The translations under genes were made by a program, and so were the position numbers. From IMG/VR virus record IMGVR_UViG_3300030385_002649, positions 186,001 to 250,000 of that record: 64,000 nucleotides of DNA, one strand, 5' to 3'. The notes beneath the pieces were generated by a model. It ran no database searches and was not told the origin of the DNA. It was given only the letters and a program-made list of their open reading frames with translations. Of the stretch, positions 17,126-51,051 are shown one piece after another (within the stretch, counting starts at the first letter, position 1; every line of letters begins with the position of its first letter).

Positions 17126-18580
17126 ATGTATAAAAGAGAGGCCGTAAAATGCGGCGTTTGCAACACAATCAAAACATTAGCATGCAGAAGCATCAAAAAA
17201 GCGATCAAAAAACACGGCGTGTATATGTGTCAATCATGTGTTATGAAACAACCAAAGTTTTCAAAAGCAAATAGCGATCGAGTTAAAAAACGATTTGAAA
17301 CACAAGAGTCTAGAGAAGAACTTAGTAAAAAAATCAAAGAATATTATGAAGACCCAGCCGCCAGAAAAAAGGCGTCAGCAAATAGCAAGAAATTGTGGCA
17401 GAATAGTGATTATAGAGCAACTCAAATAGCTTCAACGCAACAAAGTTGGCAAGATGAAGCTTATAAGAACAAAGTAACTGAAGGCGTAAAAAAAAGCTGG
17501 ACTGACGAAAGGAAAAGAAAACAGTCAGACATCACAAAAAAATTGTGGGAAGACGTCGATTACCAATTGAAACGAGACGCTGGGATGCGCAAAAGCTATA
17601 CTCCTTATCGTCGAAAACAATTATCATTACAATCAAAGAAATTGTGGCAAAATCCGAAATACCGATCTAAATTAGCCTCGTCTATGGTTGGCGTAACCAC
17701 TAGCGTGTTAGACAATACGATAATAAGTTTGGCGAAAAGGCTAGGCTACGAGGCAGAACCAATTGCTATTGGGCCGTGGACATTTGATGCATTGATCGAG
17801 CATAATAATAAGAAATTGCTAGTAGAGTGTCAAGGTGATTATTATCACAACAAACCAGAAAGAATGATTAGAGACAAACAAAAGCGCACATATTATGACA
17901 ATCACTTGTCGGACCAATATGATTTACTAATAATATGGGAACATGAATTCTATTGCATAGGGAGAATATCCGATTTATTAAAAAACCAATTCTATGAAAA
18001 AGTCAAACCAGTCTGTTTCAATCTAAGAGATCTGGTTATTGAAATTGTTGATCATAACATAGCGAAAAAATTCTATAACCAGTTTCATTACTTAAAAAAA
18101 TATCGAAGCGGCCCATTAAATATTGCGGCTAAATTGGATGGCGCAATAGTCGCTGTAATATCCTTCAGCAGCCCGACAAGAAAAGAAAGCCAAACTAGGC
18201 TTGGATTAGAAAACGGCGAATTGTTAGAGTTAGTCAGAATGTGTGTCAACCCGCAATTTCAAAACAAAAACCTGTTAAGTTTTTTGTTGTCTAAAACCGT
18301 TAAGACGATAAGATCTAACACTAAGGTCAAAGCCATAATAACGTTCGCAGACACAACGCTAGGACATACCGGAGCCGCTTATAAAGCCTCCAATTTCAAA
18401 TTCGACGGCGAGGCCAAACCAACATATTGGTACATCGACCAAAACGGATATTATAGACACAAAAAAACTGTTTGGGATCAAGCGAACAGGCTTGGGAAAA
18501 AAGAGATAGAATATGCCAATTATTGTAAATTGACTAAAGTTAAAGGCAAAAAACTTTTAAGATTTATCTACAGACTATAG
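17126..18580 (+). CDS. putative homing endonuclease: NUMOD-like repeats + Vsr/DUF559-like nuclease + Mom-like GNAT domain
   Basis: repeated SKKLWQ; D...LVECQGDYYH...IWEHE; FHYL...ELVRMC...ITFADTTLGHTGAAYKASNF; AT-rich and inverted. Confidence 0.75.
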   Translation: MYKREAVKCGVCNTIKTLACRSIKKAIKKHGVYMCQSCVMKQPKFSKANSDRVKKRFETQESREELSKKIKEYYEDPAARKKASANSKKLWQNSDYRATQIASTQQSWQDEAYKNKVTEGVKKSWTDERKRKQSDITKKLWEDVDYQLKRDAGMRKSYTPYRRKQLSLQSKKLWQNPKYRSKLASSMVGVTTSVLDNTIISLAKRLGYEAEPIAIGPWTFDALIEHNNKKLLVECQGDYYHNKPERMIRDKQKRTYYDNHLSDQYDLLIIWEHEFYCIGRISDLLKNQFYEKVKPVCFNLRDLVIEIVDHNIAKKFYNQFHYLKKYRSGPLNIAAKLDGAIVAVISFSSPTRKESQTRLGLENGELLELVRMCVNPQFQNKNLLSFLLSKTVKTIRSNTKVKAIITFADTTLGHTGAAYKASNFKFDGEAKPTYWYIDQNGYYRHKKTVWDQANRLGKKEIEYANYCKLTKVKGKKLLRFIYRL

Positions 18581-37957: not shown

Positions 37958-38351
37958 CCAAAGCTTCCTTCATATGACAAATATCAGCAGAGATCAATTT
38001 CACATCTTCGATGACGGTACCATCAAAACTGTTATTGGTCATAAACAACGGGTGAAGAGTAAGATCATCGTCCTTCTCCAGCATGAGCTTTAGCAGATTT
38101 CCTCTCGGAGTTTCTAAAACCTCGACATCAGCTGAAAGACAACCGTTTTTAAGTTCAAGCTTAGTAATAAGATGAGAGACGTCTTTGAGATCAATTTTTG
38201 AAGGGTTACCGTATCCAAGTCGCCCCATCAACGCTTTGCTCTCAATTTTCTCTTGAGCGCCGTCGACCATTTCCTTCAGAATTTCTTCTGAATAGACGTG
38301 ACCGTTTATTGTTGGGATACCAGCTTCGATTAATTTACATCGCACTTTCAT
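37944..38351 (-). CDS. prohead protease (gp21)-like protein, probably inactive
   Basis: NGHVYS, IDLKDVSHLITKL, VLETPRG; lacks ELDHP and SSRG. Confidence 0.7.
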   Translation of the reverse strand: MKVRCKLIEAGIPTINGHVYSEEILKEMVDGAQEKIESKALMGRLGYGNPSKIDLKDVSHLITKLELKNGCLSADVEVLETPRGNLLKLMLEKDDDLTLHPLFMTNNSFDGTVIEDVKLISADICHMKEALGDAQ

Positions 38352-38959
38352 AGAGAACCTATTCTTTTGCGAAGAAGCTTATCCTTGTTAGACAATTCGC
38401 CCTTGGGGTCTTCAGTCGCAAATTTCTCTTTAAGATACTTTTCTTGTTTAATCATGATCTCTACGACTTCATCAGCAGAGATTGGACGCCAGTCGTGGCA
38501 GTCAGACCCAACATCCATAGCTAGACTGTCTTCGAGGCATTTGCGGCCATACTTTACTGTCAACGTTCCGTGAACGTGCCCGAATAAGTGCCAAGATCCT
38601 TTGTGGGAACCGTTCCAGTTTCTAATTGGATAATGAAATAGAACGATTTTCTTTTTGTAATACTTAACTTCAAGATAATCTTGAACGGTTTCGAAGCCTT
38701 GGCCTTTAACGACTGGATCATGGTTACCACGGATTAGATGGATTCTGCCATTCAACCTTGGGACCCAGTTTCCTGGAACGCTTTTACGTCCCATACAGAA
38801 ATCACCTAAGTGGTAGACGTCATCGCGAGGGCCAACAACGTTATTCCAACGCGCGATTAGCTCTTCGTTCATTTCTTCGACAGAGTTCCATGGTCTGTCA
38901 CAATAAGTAATAATGTTGCGATGCCCAAAGTGGGTATCGCTAGTAAAAAATATAGCCAT
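38348..38959 (-). CDS. calcineurin-like metallophosphoesterase
   Basis: SDTHFGH, HLGD, GNHD, HYP, GHVH. Confidence 0.9.
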   Translation of the reverse strand: MAIFFTSDTHFGHRNIITYCDRPWNSVEEMNEELIARWNNVVGPRDDVYHLGDFCMGRKSVPGNWVPRLNGRIHLIRGNHDPVVKGQGFETVQDYLEVKYYKKKIVLFHYPIRNWNGSHKGSWHLFGHVHGTLTVKYGRKCLEDSLAMDVGSDCHDWRPISADEVVEIMIKQEKYLKEKFATEDPKGELSNKDKLLRKRIGSL

Positions 38960-42460: not shown

Positions 42461-42534
42461 TAGCTCGAATGGGAGTCGAACCCATAACATTTACGCCCTA
42501 AACGTAACGCCTCTGCCAATTGGGCTATCGAGCC
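42461..42534 (-). tRNA. tRNA-Leu(TAG), short variable arm
   Basis: loop TTTAGGG; class I length. Confidence 0.8.
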
Positions 42535-43724: not shown

Positions 43725-43796
43725 TCGAGAGAAAAACAAGGTGAGTGTGTTGTCAAATTGCATAAATGTGAAGTAACTCATCTTTTCACTTCTCGA
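43725..43796 (-). ncRNA. Y-RNA-like element 1 (minimal, no tRNA module)
   Basis: shared GAAGTGA-N-GAGTTACTTC...ACAC...TTTTCTC stem. Confidence 0.6.
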
Positions 43797-44013: not shown

Positions 44014-44156
44014 ATGTGAGAGAAAAACGAGAAAAGGTGTTTTTCTAAAAAAACTCGCCCATGTAGTGGACGAGGTTGGATTCGAACCAACATAAATAGA
44101 TTATTAGTCTAGTGTGTTACCATTTGGAAGTATCTCTTCTCAATCACTTCTCACAT
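44014..44156 (-). ncRNA. Y-RNA-like element 2 (anticodon arm AAT + T arm + closed acceptor hairpin)
   Basis: shared stem; GTTGG-TTCGAAT-CCAAC; CTCGTCCA/TGGGCGAG. Confidence 0.65.
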
Positions 44157-44600: not shown

Positions 44601-44996
44601 CTATACCTTTACTTCTTTCCTACCATGAGTTAAAACAATCATAGGGCGACCTACAAACGTCTCAGTCCAAGTCTTAGCCCAAGGGCCCCTAATAGTAAAG
44701 CACCAACTATCCCTATGTGCTAAGACCCTGTGATTTTTACTCTTCTTAGTCAGCTTTGGAATTAAAGAACGACGATACCAATGCATCTCGCCAGAAACGT
44801 CTTCTTCTATAATAGCACCAAACAAGAACCAAGTTAAGGCGTTGAAAGCATGGGTGTGAAAAGCTTCTCTTCCGCCCTTATTAAACTTGAGCAACATAAC
44901 GCTACACAGCCATTTAATTTCAAAAAGCACGTATGCGTCAACTGGCGATTCTGGCCCGCCGTCTTTAACCTTACAAAAAAATCTCATTATTCCCAT
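44601..44996 (-). CDS. cupin-like hypothetical phage protein
   Basis: KDGGPESPV, REAFHTHAF, H.V...W.FT.RGPW. Confidence 0.65.
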   Translation of the reverse strand: MGIMRFFCKVKDGGPESPVDAYVLFEIKWLCSVMLLKFNKGGREAFHTHAFNALTWFLFGAIIEEDVSGEMHWYRRSLIPKLTKKSKNHRVLAHRDSWCFTIRGPWAKTWTETFVGRPMIVLTHGRKEVKV

Positions 44997-46504
44997 TCAA
45001 TCGTAGCTGGTGGTTTTGAAGAAATGTCATAACAAACTCTGTTTATGCCACGTACTTCGTTACAAATCTGACTAGAGATCCTACCTAAAAGTTCGTAATC
45101 GAGCTTAGACCAATCGGCGGTCATACCGTCCGTAGCATCAACTGCTCTAACGACGCAAGTATATTCATAAGTCCTACCATCTCCCATCACTCCGACTGAT
45201 TTAGTAGGAAGAAGAACGCAGAAATACTGCCATGGTCTGGTTTCTTTTGGGATGGCGTCGATCTCTTTACGAACAATTTTGTCCGCAGCCCTAAGAATCT
45301 CAAGCTTCTTTTCACTTATAGCGCCTAAAACGCGAATCGACAATCCTGGGCCTGGAAAAGGCTGTCTCTCAACAAGATGATCTGGAAGACCTAATTTCCT
45401 ACCGATTTCTCTAGCTTCATCTTTAAAGAGACTCCTCAAAGGCTCGATCAATTCGAATCCAAGGTCTTCCGGGAGACCGCCAACATTATGGTGACTTTTA
45501 ATTGTTTTGCTCAGCCCATCGTCTGACGAACTCTCGATTACGTCTGGATAAAGCGTTCCTTGTGCCAAAAATTTGGCCCCATCAATCTTCAGAGCCTCTT
45601 CCTTAAAGACGTCAATAAAGGCGGCGCCTATGATCTTTCTTTTTGTTTCGGGGTCTTCTACACCGTCTAATTTGGTGAGGAAGCGGTCTCTTGCGTCAGC
45701 AACAATGAATCGGTCCCCAAAGATGGGTTTGAAAGCCGCAGTCACTTCCTCGACTTCTTCAGCCCGGAGCAAGCCATTGTCGACCATAATGCAGACCAAC
45801 TGATCTCCAACAGCCTCATTAACCATTAAGGCAGTAACTGCAGAATCAACTCCTCCAGAAAGCCCACAGATGACCTTGCTGTCGCCAACTCTTTCTTTAA
45901 TCTTAGCAATCTCTTGCTCGACGAAAGTCCCTTCAAATTTTAACTCCTCACAATCACATATACCAGCAAAATTAGCAAGAATTTGCCTACCGAACTGGGT
46001 GTGAGCCACTTCCGGATGGAACTGAATTCCATAAATGTCTTTTCTCTCATGTTTAATAGCTGCATAATGAGTCGATTCTGTCATGGCGATCATGTCGAAG
46101 CCTACAGGAGGCAATTCAACGCTGTCGCCATGAGACATCCAAACTTGAGAGGTTTCCGTCAGTCCGTTCCATAATGGAACTTTCGAAACCAATTGTAATT
46201 TAGCCTTGCCGTATTCTCTTTTGTCGGATTGGTCGACATAACCGCCAATCGTCTTACACAATACTTGCATTCCATAACAAATGCCGAGGATCGGAGTTCC
46301 AAGATTGAGAATTCCGTAATCAAACTCTGGAGCGTTCTCATCATAAACAGAAGATGGGCTTCCTGACAATACTATACCGTCGTAAGCACGCAGGTCTTCA
46401 ACTTTTATCGCATTAGAAACAATTTCGCATAGAACATTTAGCTCGCCAAATCGTCTCGCGATCAATTTTGTAAATTGTGAACCGTAATCAATAATCGCGA
46501 TCAT
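44987..46504 (-). CDS. guaA: GMP synthase (glutamine-hydrolysing)
   Basis: DYGSQF, GICYGMQ, HPE, SGGVDS, HHNVGG, SKPPATIEWE; GGAGG SD before ATG 46504. Confidence 0.97.
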   Translation of the reverse strand: MIAIIDYGSQFTKLIARRFGELNVLCEIVSNAIKVEDLRAYDGIVLSGSPSSVYDENAPEFDYGILNLGTPILGICYGMQVLCKTIGGYVDQSDKREYGKAKLQLVSKVPLWNGLTETSQVWMSHGDSVELPPVGFDMIAMTESTHYAAIKHERKDIYGIQFHPEVAHTQFGRQILANFAGICDCEELKFEGTFVEQEIAKIKERVGDSKVICGLSGGVDSAVTALMVNEAVGDQLVCIMVDNGLLRAEEVEEVTAAFKPIFGDRFIVADARDRFLTKLDGVEDPETKRKIIGAAFIDVFKEEALKIDGAKFLAQGTLYPDVIESSSDDGLSKTIKSHHNVGGLPEDLGFELIEPLRSLFKDEAREIGRKLGLPDHLVERQPFPGPGLSIRVLGAISEKKLEILRAADKIVRKEIDAIPKETRPWQYFCVLLPTKSVGVMGDGRTYEYTCVVRAVDATDGMTADWSKLDYELLGRISSQICNEVRGINRVCYDISSKPPATIEWE

Positions 46505-46816
46505 GCCGCCTCCAAAGGGGCTATCTACAAGTTGAAAGGATATATCCGATTGCTGCAAATCCAATAATTGCCACCATGACCATGACCATGACCATGATTA
46601 TTTGTATTTGCAATTTACTCGCTGCTTTCTTTAGACCATTTATCTAAAGTTGTTGAAAATTCTTTTTTATCGCCAAGAGTTTTTGTTATGAACTCGGCGG
46701 CGCCTTCAAGGCGTCGGTTATAAACTGAACACATCCCGCCATGATGAATAGCGAAATAAAGGTCTGCACGAGCTATTTCTAATGCTCGTATAACATCTTG
46801 TTCTTCTGTCATAATA

Positions 46817-46892: not shown

Positions 46893-47032
46893 TATACAAG
46901 AGAAAAAGCAAAAGAGAAATGTTTCCTGCTCTACCGCTGAGCTATTTCGCCACGGATGGCGAAAGTAGGATTTGAACCCACGACCTGGCACTTAAATGAT
47001 GTGAAGTAACTCTTTCTATCACTTCTTGTATA
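46893..47032 (-). ncRNA. YrlA-like Y RNA (permuted T arm - closed acceptor - D arm)
   Basis: GTGGGTTCAAATCCTAC, TTTCGCCA/TGGCGAAA, TAGCTCAGCGGTAGAGC within the shared stem. Confidence 0.75.
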
Positions 47033-47517: not shown

Positions 47518-47556
47518 TGAATTCCTAGACCTTAATCGATGCGGCCTAGTTCATCA

Positions 47557-47628
47557 CTCACCCCCCCGGACTTGCACCGAGAACCTTGACGTTAACAACG
47601 TCCTGCTCTACTATTGAGCTAGAGGCGA
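47557..47628 (-). tRNA. tRNA-Asn(GTT), divergent
   Basis: cloverleaf, T loop TGCAAGT. Confidence 0.75.
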
Positions 47629-47858
47629 ATATCTTTATTGGGTTCTCAGTCATTAATTTCATCTACCCAACACCAACTTCGTTGGATTTTAACGTATTTG
47701 CCTATCCTTGGTGTTCCCTCAGGAGGAACGTGTTCAGGACAGAATTCTTGTTTTTGCTTTATTTTGCGATTGTAAATTGACCAAGCTGCAGCGTTACGAC
47801 ATTTATGCGTTTCACATTTTCTAGGAAGTCTTTCCATTTCCATACAGTCGAACATAAA

Positions 47859-47933: not shown

Positions 47934-48063
47934 TCGTGAGGAGAAAAGTGAAAAAGTGTTTGCAAAGTCTGCGGTTTTGACGCCACAACCTTCAGTTTTT
48001 CAGACTGACGCTCTACATTGAGCTAAAATTTTGGAAGTAACTCTTTCGGTCACTTCCTCACGA
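47934..48063 (-). ncRNA. Y-RNA-like element 4 (D arm + GAA anticodon arm + T arm)
   Basis: shared stem; TCAGT-CTGAAAA-ACTGA. Confidence 0.65.
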
Positions 48064-48857: not shown

Positions 48858-49041
48858 AATTTATTTATGCTTGGCCCGGCGGATCTGGATCGTGGGATTT
48901 GTGCCATAATTTCCAAGCGAGGACTTGGTAGCTGTGCCAACATTTGTGGAAACCAGACCCATAAACCTTGTCACACCGACAATTTTTATAGACACCCAAA
49001 GTGTTAGTCTTTCTCTAATTTTGAAAACTTATTTTGTAGGA

Positions 49042-49168
49042 TGATGAGAGAACTCTTGAAAAACCGTTAGTGTCAATTATGGGACTTGAACCCACAACAT
49101 GCAGCTTTGAAGGCTATTACTCTACCATTGAGTTAAATTGAAGTAAGTCTTTCTATCACTTCTCATCA
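49042..49168 (-). ncRNA. Y-RNA-like element 5 carrying a near-complete tRNA body with TCA anticodon
   Basis: shared stem; TCAATT/AATTGA, D arm, loop CTTCAAA, GTGGG-TTCAAGT-CCCAT. Confidence 0.65.
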
Positions 49169-49169
49169 A

Positions 49170-49263
49170 TGAATGGCAAAGGGATCGCACCTCTGTCCGA
49201 CAACCCGGGAAACATGAACAAGCTCCGCTGCGTTGGGTTGTCGTCCCCCTATGGGGCCCATTC
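49170..49263 (-). ncRNA. tRNA-like RNA with extended anticodon arm
   Basis: GAATGG/CCATTC, CCCC/GGGG, CGACAACCC/GGGTTGTCG, T-like arm. Confidence 0.5.
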
Positions 49264-49266
49264 TAA

Positions 49267-49830
49267 TCATTTTCTTGAAAACGTTTTGGTCTGAGAATGG
49301 CAATTAGGGCATAACCACCTCAAGTTTTCTAACCTATTATCGTTATTCTTCCCATTAATATGATCAATTTGAAGAATTAATGGTTTCCCATTATGAACAT
49401 CATCGCATTGACATGTCGAACAATGCGATGATCTTTGTTTCTTTTTAAATCTTCGTCTTAATGTAATCTGTGCTACTTTGCTATTTTCGCAAAACACTTG
49501 CCCGTCGGATTTTTTATTATCACGATTAAGAGCTTCGATAGCAACAATGTCGCCTGCAAAGTGATCGATATCAAGCTTAAGTCTTTTTATGTGTTTTTTG
49601 ATGCTTGTCCAATTATTCCCTCTTGCAGATAATCCCAATTTTGTAAGCAATTCAGTATAACATCGGCTTCCTTTAACGTTAATCTTTAACTGTTCATCTG
49701 TCCAAGTTCGATTGAATAGACCATAAGGGGAACAATCAAAACAATATCTGCGACTAGTAGCCGATTTCCATTTTCCATCAATTTTTATATGAGTTTTAAA
49801 TTCTTGCTTACAACCTTTACAAATCTTCAT
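49267..49830 (-). CDS. HNH endonuclease
   Basis: LQIDHINGKNNDNRLENLRWLCPNCH; starts directly after tRNA-Pro. Confidence 0.9.
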   Translation of the reverse strand: MKICKGCKQEFKTHIKIDGKWKSATSRRYCFDCSPYGLFNRTWTDEQLKINVKGSRCYTELLTKLGLSARGNNWTSIKKHIKRLKLDIDHFAGDIVAIEALNRDNKKSDGQVFCENSKVAQITLRRRFKKKQRSSHCSTCQCDDVHNGKPLILQIDHINGKNNDNRLENLRWLCPNCHSQTKTFSRK

Positions 49831-49831
49831 A

Positions 49832-49906
49832 TCAGAGCGGTGAGATTCGAACTCACGATCTCGACATCCCAAATGTCGCGCCTTGGCCAGACTAGGCTAC
49901 GCTCTG
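49832..49906 (-). tRNA. tRNA-Pro(TGG)
   Basis: canonical cloverleaf. Confidence 0.9.
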
Positions 49907-50622: not shown

Positions 50623-51051
50623 TTACTTATGAAGAAATTTATACCAACTTTGATCTTTAGCCGTTTTCCTACTATGACAATTGGCACATCTGACTTCACA
50701 TTTTTCAATCTCTTCTAATAACTTGTCTATCCTTGAATAACGTATGAGTTTAGAAATAGGAGCTTTTTTATCTCTAAGATGGTCGAATTCGAGAACTGTC
50801 GGATCCGATTCTCCACAATCAACACAGGGGTGTTTTAACAAATGCTCTAATATGAATTTCCTATTTTCCAATCTTCTATTTGTGTTATAAATTCTTACTC
50901 TGTCTTTTGTTTTCCCTTCATCATTTTGGTATATCTTTTTTCTATAAATCTTAAAACATGATCGACACATCGATTGTAAGGAAACGTTTGTCTTCTTCCA
51001 ATTAAATTCCGATTTTAATTTTTCCTTCTTACATCGGTTACAAATCTTCAT
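50623..51051 (-). CDS. HNH endonuclease
   Basis: CVDCG...LEFDH...CEVRCANCH; stop abuts tRNA-Val. Confidence 0.9.
   Translation of the reverse strand: MKICNRCKKEKLKSEFNWKKTNVSLQSMCRSCFKIYRKKIYQNDEGKTKDRVRIYNTNRRLENRKFILEHLLKHPCVDCGESDPTVLEFDHLRDKKAPISKLIRYSRIDKLLEEIEKCEVRCANCHSRKTAKDQSWYKFLHK

What the first reader, a model, noticed from the sequence alone, without database searches (positions are those of the whole stretch)
49042..49168. Opal (UCA anticodon) tRNA body nested inside a Y-RNA-like stem
Seen: 6-bp acceptor TCAATT/AATTGA, normal D and T arms, loop CT-TCA-AA and a short variable loop, so it is not tRNA-Sec. TGA is used as a true stop in this window. Inference: a conditionally excisable UGA suppressor or a stop-codon-reading mimic.
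Basis: partly seen in the sequence, partly recalled or inferred. Interest (0 to 1): 0.7.

Follow-up and report, generated by a model that had tools for sequence, protein, structure and literature searches.

The report
tRNA(UCA) nested in phage Y-RNA scaffold
A marine jumbo phage carries a complete tRNA-shaped RNA with a stop-codon (UCA) anticodon. It sits inside the conserved double-helix stem that this group of phages uses for the small RNA partners of their Ro60-like protein, so it is more likely a tRNA mimic on a Y-RNA scaffold than an ordinary suppressor tRNA.

Summary
A 72-nt class-I tRNA with anticodon UCA lies at 49071-49142 on the minus strand (Rfam tRNA 57.6 bits). It is bracketed by two helices, 8 + 8 bp, whose outer ends are exactly 49042 and 49168.

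The stem is not an isolated oddity. It is one of five paralogous scaffolds in this phage's tRNA array. The same scaffold occurs in about 20 further units in other phages, with compensatory changes in both helices. The layout is: lower helix, internal loop 5' AGUGANN / 3' ..UUUUC, upper helix, then UUACUUC. In at least 13 independent loci these units lie 0.1-2 kb from a TROVE (Ro60/Rsr) gene. This 370-kb phage encodes one too. "Y-RNA-like" is therefore supported.

The genome uses the standard code. TGA ends about a third of ORFs, and the RNA is not tRNA-Sec.

Whether the tRNA is released and reads UGA is unresolved. Several points favour a non-decoding tRNA-mimic module:
- U1·C72 and A27·C43 mismatches.
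- An AU-rich acceptor, with 38% GC against 48-63% for the other 33 tRNAs.
- Loss of the Arg identity base A20.
- Free or hypervariable "anticodons" in related nested modules.

A gated suppressor precursor remains a live rival. I rate this a new variant of a known kind.

The parts
49042..49168 (-). Whole unit: Y-RNA-type scaffold enclosing the tRNA(UCA)
   Evidence: MFE fold. Family scan score 15/16.
49161..49168 (-). Lower helix, 5' strand UGAUGAGA
   Evidence: Pairs with 49042-49049. The equivalent helix in sister units has a different but complementary sequence.
49042..49049 (-). Lower helix, 3' strand UCUCAUCA
49154..49160 (-). Conserved internal loop, 5' side AGUGAUA (family consensus AGUGANN)
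   Evidence: AGUGA is invariant in alignment A2 of 13 units.
49050..49057 (-). Internal loop, 3' side AAGAGUUC (family consensus G/A-N-N-UUUUC). This copy is more purine-rich than most.
   Evidence: One search lists the loops of 23 units.
49146..49153 (-). Upper helix, 5' strand GAAAGACU
   Evidence: Pairs with 49058-49065. The G-to-C change relative to the sister units' GAAAGAG is compensated on the 3' strand.
49058..49065 (-). Upper helix, 3' strand GGUUUUUC
49140..49146 (-). Conserved junction motif UUACUUC. Its last three bases are nucleotides 1-3 of the tRNA.
   Evidence: Present in all 5 window units, in the G002 units, in the Bacillus phage G units and in many metagenome units.
49071..49142 (-). 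tRNA body, class I, discriminator A. Anticodon UCA at 49108-49110.
   Evidence: ARAGORN. Rfam 57.6 bits. GC 0.38. Closest paralogs are the phage's tRNA-Arg(UCU) genes.
47934..48063 (-). Sister unit with lower helix UCGUGAGGA/UCCUCACGA. It encloses a degenerate, non-permuted tRNA-like body (47963-48032, loop CUGAAAA) and ends 2 nt before tRNA-Asn.
46893..47032 (-). Sister unit with lower helix UAUACAAGA/UCUUGUAUA. It encloses a circularly permuted tRNA-like module (T arm, closed acceptor hairpin, D arm), which is the YrlA architecture, and ends 3 nt before tRNA-Lys.
   Evidence: Rfam YrlA full-length match, 31.6 bits, E 2.4e-5 in the local search, below the gathering score of 69. Fold.
44014..44156 (-). 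Sister unit with lower helix AUGUGAGA/UCUCACAU. It encloses an anticodon-arm-like hairpin, a T arm and an acceptor-like hairpin, and lies between tRNA-Phe and tRNA-Trp.
43725..43796 (-). Sister unit with lower helix UCGAGA/UCUCGA and only a small hairpin inside. It lies between tRNA-Asp and tRNA-Tyr.

Best explanation
The locus is one of five paralogous Y-RNA-type scaffolds embedded in the tRNA array of a 370-kb marine jumbo myophage that encodes its own Ro60/Rsr (TROVE) protein.

Shown: the RNA's 5' and 3' flanks form a bipartite stem, made of a lower helix, a conserved AGUGA/UUUUC internal loop, an upper helix and the junction UUACUUC. This stem is conserved with compensatory changes across about 23 units in many phages. 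In other phages it sits next to the rsr gene.

In this copy the variable 'module' held by the stem is a complete, non-permuted cloverleaf. It was probably derived from a phage tRNA-Arg(UCU)-like gene: its anticodon is one base from UCU, and it has lost A20.

Inferred: the roughly 127-nt RNA acts mainly as an Rsr-bound Y RNA whose tRNA-shaped module is a mimic. It would serve as a handle or bait for tRNA-binding factors, as proposed for YrlA and Yrn1, rather than as a routinely charged decoder. On this reading the UCA triplet is not under decoding selection. RNase P could still nick or release the module, as it does for the 7-bp acceptor stem of M. smegmatis YrlA.
For: Scaffold family:
- The motif GAGAAGUGA..UUACUUC occurs 5 times in the genome. 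All copies are on the minus strand within the tRNA array, each directly after a tRNA 3' end or remnant.
- All five units fold into the same architecture.
- Across 23 units, the lower helix is paired at 0.83 of positions against 0.52 with shuffled partners, and the upper helix at 0.94 against 0.70. Each position shows 3-6 Watson-Crick pair types.
- With a full-rescan control, scores of 15 or more occur in 6/33 own pairings against 4/1048 foreign ones.

Link to Rsr:
- A TROVE ORF of 549 aa is present in this genome. Its best solved-structure matches are two PDB chains named TROVE domain-containing protein, 9L5Y and 9KOP. Those are the accession codes that the Thermus phage phiLo Ro60 paper gives for its structures.
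- Rsr homologs lie 0.1-2 kb from the motif in L085, L094, L115, L117, L125, L128, L154, L159, L160, L161, L165, L176 and L179.
- The two closest relatives that lack the motif, G001 and G003, also lack TROVE, although both records are incomplete.
- Bacillus phage G, the closest cultured Rsr at 38% identity, has five such units directly upstream of its TROVE gene.
- Sub-threshold full-length Rfam YrlA matches fall on a sister unit and on G002 units.

Against routine decoding:
- U1.C72 and A27.C43 mismatches.
- GC 0.38 against 0.48-0.63 for the other 33 tRNAs.
- The D loop lacks A20 (by reading).
- Standard code, with TGA ending 33% of ORFs.
- The three closest relatives have 34-44 tRNAs and no UCA tRNA.
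- Nested modules elsewhere carry GUA, UGA, UAU, GUU, UCG, CAU, GCU and GAA triplets, and many lack an acceptor stem.
- In one orthologous set the anticodon loop differs at 4 of 7 positions while the rest differs at 1 of 131.
Against: The cloverleaf is unusually complete for a Y-RNA module. All tertiary-interaction nucleotides are present (U8, A14, A15:U48, G18G19, A21, U33, A37, G46, U54U55C56, A58), the anticodon loop has 7 nt, and the tRNA score of 57.6 bits lies within the range of the phage's real tRNAs.

Other Rsr-encoding jumbo phages carry stand-alone stop-anticodon tRNAs. These are Atu_ph07 with UCA, G002 with CUA and phage G with an annotated UUA tRNA. Suppressor-type tRNAs may therefore be functional in this kind of phage.

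The unit lies about 83 kb from rsr in this genome. Its 3' internal loop departs from the consensus. Unlike its sisters, it is not followed by a tRNA.

No binding, expression or processing data exist. No RNA runs were listed, and the complex prediction was not folded.
Confidence: 0.55

Rival explanations
1. Gated suppressor precursor. The unit is a pre-tRNA whose leader and trailer are locked in the Y-type stem. RNase P and 3' trimming, perhaps controlled by Rsr binding or infection stage, release a tRNA(UCA). A host synthetase that ignores the anticodon charges it (LeuRS is the best guess from A73 and A15:U48), and it reads UGA, giving low-level or timed read-through.
For: The cloverleaf is complete and has a good tRNA score. 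RNase P cleaves a Y-RNA module that has a 7-bp acceptor stem in M. smegmatis (PMC4201824). Lack of an encoded CCA is normal for this phage's tRNAs. There are precedents for UCA, CUA and UUA tRNAs in standard-code, Rsr-encoding jumbo phages. TGA-terminated ORFs have shorter read-through extensions: 11/165 reach 50 aa or more, against 36/220 for TAA and 20/113 for TAG. That would fit tolerance of UGA read-through, but it is confounded by gene-junction geometry.
Against: There is a 1:72 mismatch and a 6-bp AU-rich acceptor, and GC content is an outlier. No clear identity set for any synthetase is present: G73 for Trp, U73 for Cys and Gly, A20 for Arg and G3:U70 for Ala are all absent (by reading). 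TGA ends a third of ORFs, and no excess of in-frame TGA-joined gene pairs is seen, with 5 of 42 pairs. Excision would destroy a scaffold that shows compensatory maintenance. Anticodons are unconstrained in related nested modules.
Confidence: 0.25
2. Decaying relic. A duplicated tRNA-Arg(UCU)-like gene was trapped in a spacer scaffold and is drifting. The UCA anticodon and the mismatches are early pseudogene lesions, and the unit has no function.
For: Neighbouring units hold obviously degenerate tRNA pieces: 47963-48032 with T loop GUCAAAA, a second tRNA-Asn with T loop GUGCAAG, and tRNA 3'-end remnants upstream of the motifs. An HNH endonuclease gene abuts the unit. The unit has lost the flanking tRNAs that its sisters have. 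Its GC is low.
Against: Both scaffold helices are intact at 15 of 16 positions, with a compensated G-C to C-G change. All tertiary tRNA nucleotides are retained. Its tRNA score of 57.6 bits is well above that of the degenerate neighbour at 48.3 bits.
Confidence: 0.13
3. Generic processing stem. The helices are RNase III-type or insulating processing signals of the polycistronic tRNA transcript, like the stems that bracket rRNAs, and have nothing to do with Rsr.
For: In four sister units the lower helix begins 4-6 nt after one tRNA and ends 2-4 nt before the next. This would bring the tRNA ends together for processing.
Against: The same scaffold forms tandem arrays with no tRNAs between them, immediately beside rsr, in many phages. 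The conserved internal loop and the UUACUUC junction are not needed for RNase III. This rival is compatible with, rather than exclusive of, tRNA-punctuated release of Y RNAs.
Confidence: 0.05

Closest known systems
YrlA (Rfam RF02553), the bacterial and phage Y RNA with a tRNA-like domain (Chen et al. 2014, PMC4201824)
   Same: The 5' and 3' ends form a long stem with an internal loop. The stem carries a tRNA-like module and the RNA is associated with an Ro60/Rsr gene. A sister unit (46893-47032) has the permuted order of T arm, acceptor hairpin and D arm, and gives a full-length sub-threshold match.
   Different: The UCA unit gives no YrlA hit. Its module is a complete tRNA in normal order, with an anticodon arm, and the stem extends from the acceptor end rather than replacing the anticodon stem. 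The loop motif is AGUGANNG rather than GNCGAAN0-1G. In this genome the unit lies about 83 kb from rsr, inside a tRNA array.
Deinococcus radiodurans Yrn1
   Same: According to Chen et al., the T-like and D-like arms are in the other orientation relative to the ends, and an 'anticodon arm' lies between them. The Ro-binding stem therefore occupies the acceptor side, which is the same topology as here.
   Different: Yrn1 has a 6-nt 'anticodon' loop, no V arm, an incomplete D arm and no separate acceptor helix. Here the cloverleaf is complete. Sequence relatedness was not tested.
Rsr-adjacent repeat units of Bacillus phage G (upstream of gp540) and of uncultured phages (G002, L085, L094, L115, L125, L161)
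   Same: They share the same scaffold grammar: a unit-specific lower helix, a purine-rich loop (AGCGG or AGUGA), an upper helix and UUACUUC. They also occur as several units per genome.
   Different: Those arrays sit beside rsr and mostly carry short or permuted modules. The window's units are interleaved with real tRNAs, and one of them carries a full tRNA.
Stand-alone suppressor-type tRNAs of jumbo phages, e.g. Agrobacterium phage Atu_ph07 tRNA(UCA) (PMC6102473)
   Same: A UCA anticodon in a standard-code phage with many TGA stops. That phage also encodes a TROVE protein.
   Different: The Atu_ph07 tRNA has a GC-rich 7-bp acceptor stem and an encoded CCA, and no Y-type flanking stem is evident.
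Code-4 (TGA to Trp) recoded phages with tRNA(UCA) (Borges et al., bioRxiv 10.1101/2021.08.26.457843)
   Same: A phage-encoded UCA tRNA.
   Different: No recoding signature is present: coding density is equal under codes 11 and 4, TGA is not depleted, and GC is 45%.

Membership tests
tRNA (RF00005) | Cloverleaf scoring above the Rfam gathering score | tested here: met
   57.6 bits against 29. ARAGORN also calls it.
tRNA (RF00005) | Fully paired 7-bp acceptor stem and 5-bp anticodon stem | tested here: not met
   U1.C72 and A27.C43 are flagged as non-standard pairs in the cmscan alignment.
tRNA (RF00005) | Processed to about 75 nt, CCA-tailed and aminoacylated | not testable with these tools
   No RNA runs were listed.
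tRNA-Sec (RF01852) | Long variable arm, 8/5 or 9/4 acceptor/T helices, model score | tested here: not met
   No RF01852 match at E up to 10. The variable loop has 5 nt and the geometry is 7/5.
YrlA (RF02553) | Score at or above the gathering threshold of 69 bits | tested here: not met
   No hit for the UCA unit. The sister unit scores 31.6 bits and the G002 units 41.5 and 34.4 bits. Tandem tRNAs also give sub-threshold hits.
YrlA (RF02553) | Permuted tRNA-like domain: T arm, then a closed acceptor hairpin, then the D arm | tested here: not met
   The UCA unit is in normal tRNA order. The feature is met by the sister unit at 46893-47032.
YrlA (RF02553) | GNCGAAN0-1G motif in the 5' strand of the stem | tested here: not met
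   The 5' strand reads GAGAAGUGAUAGAAAG. The family consensus is AGUGANNG.
YrlA (RF02553) | Encoded within 4 kb of rsr on the same strand | tested here: not met
   rsr lies at G000:150895-152544 and the unit at G000:235042-235168, both on the minus strand and about 83 kb apart. Homologous units in 13 other loci do meet this criterion.
Y RNA (functional class: Ro60/Rsr partner) | 5' and 3' ends form a conserved stem with an internal loop or bulge | tested here: met
Y RNA (functional class: Ro60/Rsr partner) | Ro60/Rsr gene present in the genome | tested here: met
   TROVE 50.3 bits against a cut-off of 23. PDB chains named TROVE domain-containing protein (9L5Y, 9KOP), E 3e-17. The phiLo Ro60 paper gives these accession codes for its structures.
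Y RNA (functional class: Ro60/Rsr partner) | Physically bound by Ro60/Rsr | not testable with these tools
   The complex-prediction job was not folded and gives no evidence either way.
Stop-codon-recoding system (code 4 phage) | In-frame TGA in genes, coding density gain under code 4, TGA depleted as a stop | tested here: not met
   Density is 0.910 under code 11 and 0.909 under code 4. TGA ends 165 of 498 ORFs. Only 5 of 42 in-frame adjacent ORF pairs are joined by TGA.

The most novel reading that the evidence does not exclude
Phage Y RNAs of this scaffold type may be modular display platforms for tRNA bodies, with the anticodon loop as an exchangeable specificity element. In one Rsr-adjacent orthologous set, only the 7-nt loop changes (UCG, CAU, GCU, GAA) while the rest is nearly invariant. 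The window's unit would then be a freshly captured, still complete tRNA on that platform. It could act as a bait or decoy for host factors that target tRNA anticodon loops (anticodon nucleases, modification or repair enzymes) delivered to Rsr-PNPase. Alternatively it could be an Rsr-gated store from which an opal suppressor is released at a chosen stage of infection. Either way, the five units together show several of the arrangements that could lie between a tRNA gene and a Y RNA.
Probability: 0.2. Interest if true: 0.85.

Novelty: new variant of a known kind. Interest (0 to 1): 0.65.

Why it matters
Y RNAs with tRNA-like domains are known, but the role of that domain and how Y RNAs arose from tRNAs remain open. 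In this one phage, the same covarying scaffold holds five different contents: nothing, a permuted YrlA-type domain, a hybrid, a degenerate tRNA and a complete tRNA. It therefore shows several possible intermediates side by side.

The scaffold grammar (AGUGA/AGCGG loop, UUACUUC junction) is not captured by Rfam at its gathering score, yet it marks Rsr loci across many uncultured phages. A dedicated model would annotate a sizeable hidden RNA family.

The finding also warns that "suppressor tRNA" calls in phage genomes can be Y-RNA modules. Finally, it gives concrete substrates for testing whether Ro60 proteins gate the maturation of a tRNA.

Tried and rejected
1. tRNA-Sec. Rejected on structure, and the ARAGORN label is only anticodon-based.
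2. Alternative genetic code. Rejected.
3. Local hairpin GAAGUGA/UUACUUC as the repeated element. ARAGORN reads the same stretch as a D arm in L062. The outer pairs do not covary in the G002 copies, whereas the long-range helices do.
4. Hammerhead ribozyme, suggested by UGAUGAG in this copy. The core is not conserved in the sister units.
5. MITE or target-site-duplication reading of the 19-nt direct repeat D3 and of the inverted repeats. There are no other copies beyond the five units.
6. Orthologs of the UCA unit. An IMG/VR pattern search found none. The closest relatives G001-G003 have no UCA tRNA. The only metagenome match, a Tara scaffold, is 100% identical over 14.4 kb and therefore uninformative.
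7. Rfam Y_RNA or YrlA on the unit itself. No hit. Sub-threshold YrlA hits elsewhere are partly tandem-tRNA artefacts, since the control genomes also give hits.
8. RNA-seq evidence. No RNA run was listed. The DNA runs are marine metagenomes kept only as contigs.
9. Rsr-RNA complex prediction. The job was not folded.
10. RtcB and CCA-adding enzyme in the phage. No Pfam hit for either.
11. Promoter and terminator scans. Nothing above the shuffle background.
12. The MAFFT alignment of whole units (A2) put the 3' strands out of register. Pair counts were therefore made with an anchored script instead of the count of structure pairs.

Full report
**Context.** The window is G000:C1:186001-250000 of a single 370,804-bp virus record with direct terminal repeats and 45% GC. 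It encodes a long tail sheath, an SbcC-like ATPase, helicases and HNH endonucleases. It has no close relative among GenBank phages. DNA runs that hold it are marine metagenomes. ARAGORN finds 34 tRNAs in the genome. Of these, 29 lie on the minus strand of the window between 30.9 and 54.5 kb, interspersed with small ORFs and HNH genes.

**The observation.**
- A tRNA with anticodon UCA lies at 49071-49142 on the minus strand. It scores 57.6 bits with Rfam tRNA, and only two pairs are non-standard: U1.C72 and A27.C43.
- It is a class-I tRNA with a 5-nt variable loop, a loop reading CU-UCA-AA, a normal D arm and T arm, discriminator A and no CCA. No tRNA of this phage encodes CCA.
- It is not tRNA-Sec.
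- The flanks form two 8-bp helices separated by a 7 x 8-nt internal loop.
- Against shuffles, this flank pairing is the most significant among all 34 tRNAs (z = -3.1).

**Genetic code.**
- Greedy ORF sets cover 0.910 of the genome under code 11 and 0.909 under code 4. TGA ends 165 of 498 ORFs. TGA is therefore a genuine and frequent stop.
- TGA-terminated ORFs have shorter in-frame extensions than TAA or TAG ORFs. Overlapping ATGA junctions could produce this, so I do not lean on it.

**The stem belongs to a family.**
- The 5' flank is a copy of a motif (GAGAAGUGA, 9-12 nt, UUACUUC). It occurs five times in the genome and nowhere else. All copies are on the minus strand at window positions 43790, 44148, 47023, 48054 and 49160. 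Each follows a tRNA 3' end or a remnant of one within a few bases.
- In each unit, the bases just upstream of AGUGA pair with bases just downstream of a U-rich stretch ending in UUC. The sequence of this lower helix differs in every unit: UGAUGAGA, UCGUGAGGA, UAUACAAGA, AUGUGAGA, UCGAGA.
- A second, upper helix also shows compensated changes: GAAAGAG/CUCUUUU, GAGAAGAG/CUUUUCUC, and in the UCA unit GAAAGAC/GUUUUUC.
- In four units the 3' strand ends 2-4 nt before the next tRNA. The UCA unit is the exception.

**The same scaffold elsewhere.**
- It occurs five times in a relative found through the sheath protein (G002, 395 kb, complete), directly upstream of that phage's TROVE gene.
- It occurs in unrelated IMG/VR and metagenome contigs.
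- It occurs five times upstream of the TROVE gene gp540 of Bacillus phage G, with AGCGG in place of AGUGA.
- Over 23 units, the lower helix is paired at 83% of positions against 52% with shuffled partners (maximum 65% in 2000 shuffles). The upper helix is paired at 94% against 70%. Positions 2-6 of the lower helix show 3-6 Watson-Crick pair types with almost no mispairs.
- A stricter control rescans each downstream region with foreign 5' strands. Scores of 15 or more occur in 6/33 own pairings against 4/1048 foreign ones. The UCA unit scores 15.

**Link to Ro60/Rsr.**
- The genome has a 549-aa TROVE ORF (Pfam 50 bits). Its best solved-structure matches are two PDB chains named TROVE domain-containing protein, 9L5Y and 9KOP. 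Those are the accession codes that the Thermus phage phiLo Ro60 paper gives for its structures.
- A tblastn of this protein against all fetched loci finds an Rsr homolog 0.1-2 kb from the motif in 13 loci. Those loci had been collected only by RNA motif.
- Of the additional motif-bearing viral records, the complete or nearly complete ones encode TROVE. The two close relatives without the motif also lack TROVE, although both are incomplete.
- Rfam's YrlA model gives a full-length but sub-threshold match to the sister unit at 46894-47025 (31.6 bits) and to G002 units (41.5 and 34.4 bits).
- That model also gives sub-threshold hits on tandem tRNAs in control genomes, and it misses the phage G units. 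The Rfam evidence is therefore supportive only.
- Published work establishes three relevant points (PMC4201824, PMC12135203). Phages encode Ro60 and Y-RNA-like RNAs. Y RNAs carry tRNA-like domains in two different topologies (YrlA and Yrn1). [quoted passage not shown]

**What the scaffolds hold.** Within the window the five units enclose:
- a small hairpin only (43725-43796);
- a hybrid of an anticodon-arm-like hairpin, a T arm and a closed acceptor hairpin (44014-44156);
- a clean permuted YrlA-type domain (46893-47032);
- a degenerate tRNA in normal order with loop CUGAAAA and a broken T loop (47934-48063);
- the complete tRNA(UCA).

Elsewhere, many units hold tRNA-like bodies in normal order, with or without an AU-rich acceptor helix. 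Their anticodon-like triplets include GUA, UGA, UAU, GUU and others.

In one set of six near-identical Rsr-adjacent units, five of the seven loop columns vary against 23 of 131 elsewhere (Fisher p = 0.004). One pair differs at 4 of 7 loop positions and at 1 of 131 other positions. With roughly 15-20 distinct nested triplets seen, one stop anticodon among them is not surprising by chance.

**Origin and identity of the tRNA.**
- Its closest relatives are the phage's own tRNA-Arg(UCU) genes (75% and 73% overall). Its anticodon, variable and T region is closer to these and to tRNA-Gly(UCC) than to nested modules of other phages.
- UCU and UCC are each one substitution from UCA.
- Relative to tRNA-Arg, it has lost the D-loop A20. 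Its anticodon stem shows one compensated change and two weakening changes. Its acceptor is replaced by an AU-rich helix whose first three bases are the end of the conserved UUACUUC junction.
- Its GC content of 0.38 lies far outside the 0.48-0.63 range of the other 33 tRNAs.
- By textbook E. coli identity rules (my knowledge, not tested here), it lacks the main determinants for Trp, Cys, Gly, Arg and Ala. LeuRS, which reads A73 and the tertiary core, is the only obvious candidate.

**Interpretation.**
- Shown: a complete cloverleaf with a UCA anticodon; a covarying bipartite stem around it; paralogy with four other units; homology of the scaffold to Rsr-adjacent arrays; an rsr gene in the genome; and use of the standard code.
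- Inferred: the RNA is an Rsr partner, and its tRNA body serves as the mimic or effector module rather than as a decoder.
- I put 0.55 on this reading, 0.25 on a gated precursor of a functional opal suppressor, 0.13 on a drifting relic, and 0.05 on a purely processing role for the stem.
- The suppressor rival stays alive for two reasons. The cloverleaf is intact. Other Rsr-encoding jumbo phages carry stand-alone stop-anticodon tRNAs: Atu_ph07 UCA, G002 CUA and phage G UUA.

**Limits.**
- Everything about this unit rests on one genome. The Tara scaffold is identical.
- There are no expression, processing or binding data.
- The pair statistics come from my own anchored script, because MAFFT misregistered the 3' strands.
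- The partner positions were chosen by maximising pairing. The rescan control addresses this, but only partly.

Noticed in passing
L156, L159, L160, L175, L179, L182 (alignment A1): Six near-identical Rsr-adjacent units carry a normal-order tRNA-like body without an acceptor stem. The 7-nt anticodon loop is hypervariable (UCG, UCG, GCU, CAU, CAU, GAA) while the rest is almost invariant, for example 4/7 against 1/131 differences between L160 and L182. This suggests diversifying selection or loop swapping.
   Followed up: partly
L062:759-831 (G002), L184:7456-7530 (Bacillus phage G), L144:1471-1545 (Atu_ph07): Three other TROVE-encoding jumbo phages each carry a stand-alone tRNA with a stop-codon anticodon (CUA, annotated UUA, UCA). 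In G002 and phage G it lies within about 3 kb of the Y-RNA array or rsr. I did not test whether stop-anticodon tRNAs and rsr co-occur more often than expected.
   Followed up: partly
window 47963-48032 (-): A tRNA-like sequence found by Rfam (48.3 bits) but not by ARAGORN. It has loop CUGAAAA, T loop GUCAAAA and a poor acceptor, and it is nested in the sister scaffold 47934-48063.
   Followed up: yes
window 49172-49266 (-) and 48891-48964 (+): Between the HNH gene and the unit there is a 9-bp hairpin (CGACAACCC/GGGUUGUCG) followed by a T-arm-like remnant. Downstream of the unit, on the opposite strand, there are two T-arm/acceptor-like fragments resembling the 3' part of the tRNA (inverted repeats I1 and I7). 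These look like debris from tRNA rearrangements.
   Followed up: no
window 30974-31049 (-) and 31283-31396 (-): ARAGORN reports a tRNA with a 4-base anticodon (uaag), and Rfam scores it at 51.9 bits. Nearby is a 114-nt Rfam tRNA match (45 bits) with a GC-rich insertion of about 45 nt after the anticodon region.
   Followed up: no
window 35012-35099 (-) and 36257-36342 (-): Sub-threshold Rfam tRNA-Sec matches (37.9 and 31.7 bits against 47). These are probably long-variable-arm (class II) tRNA-like sequences that ARAGORN missed. The first abuts tRNA-Ser(CGA).
   Followed up: no
window 42461-42534 (-): A tRNA called Leu(UAG) is only 74 nt long with a 5-nt variable loop, which is class I and unusual for a bacterial-type tRNA-Leu. 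The second tRNA-Asn copy (47556-47629) has an aberrant T loop (GUGCAAG).
   Followed up: no
whole genome (G000): ORFs ending in TGA have shorter in-frame read-through extensions (median 8 codons; 6.7% reach 50 codons or more) than those ending in TAA (16%) or TAG (18%). Overlapping ATGA junctions are a possible trivial cause.
   Followed up: partly
window 44987-46564 (-), 49267-49872 (-), 50623-51051 (-), 38348-38959 (-): Protein genes inside the tRNA array: a GuaA-like GMP synthase/glutamine amidotransferase (about 50% identical to bacterial-type guaA), two HNH endonucleases and a phosphoesterase (phrog_547).
   Followed up: partly
window 17126-18580 (+); G000:150318-150830 (-): A 484-aa protein combines a Mom-family domain with a weak REase_MTES_1575 match. 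Next to rsr there is a circularly permuted YpsA (SLOG) family protein.
   Followed up: no
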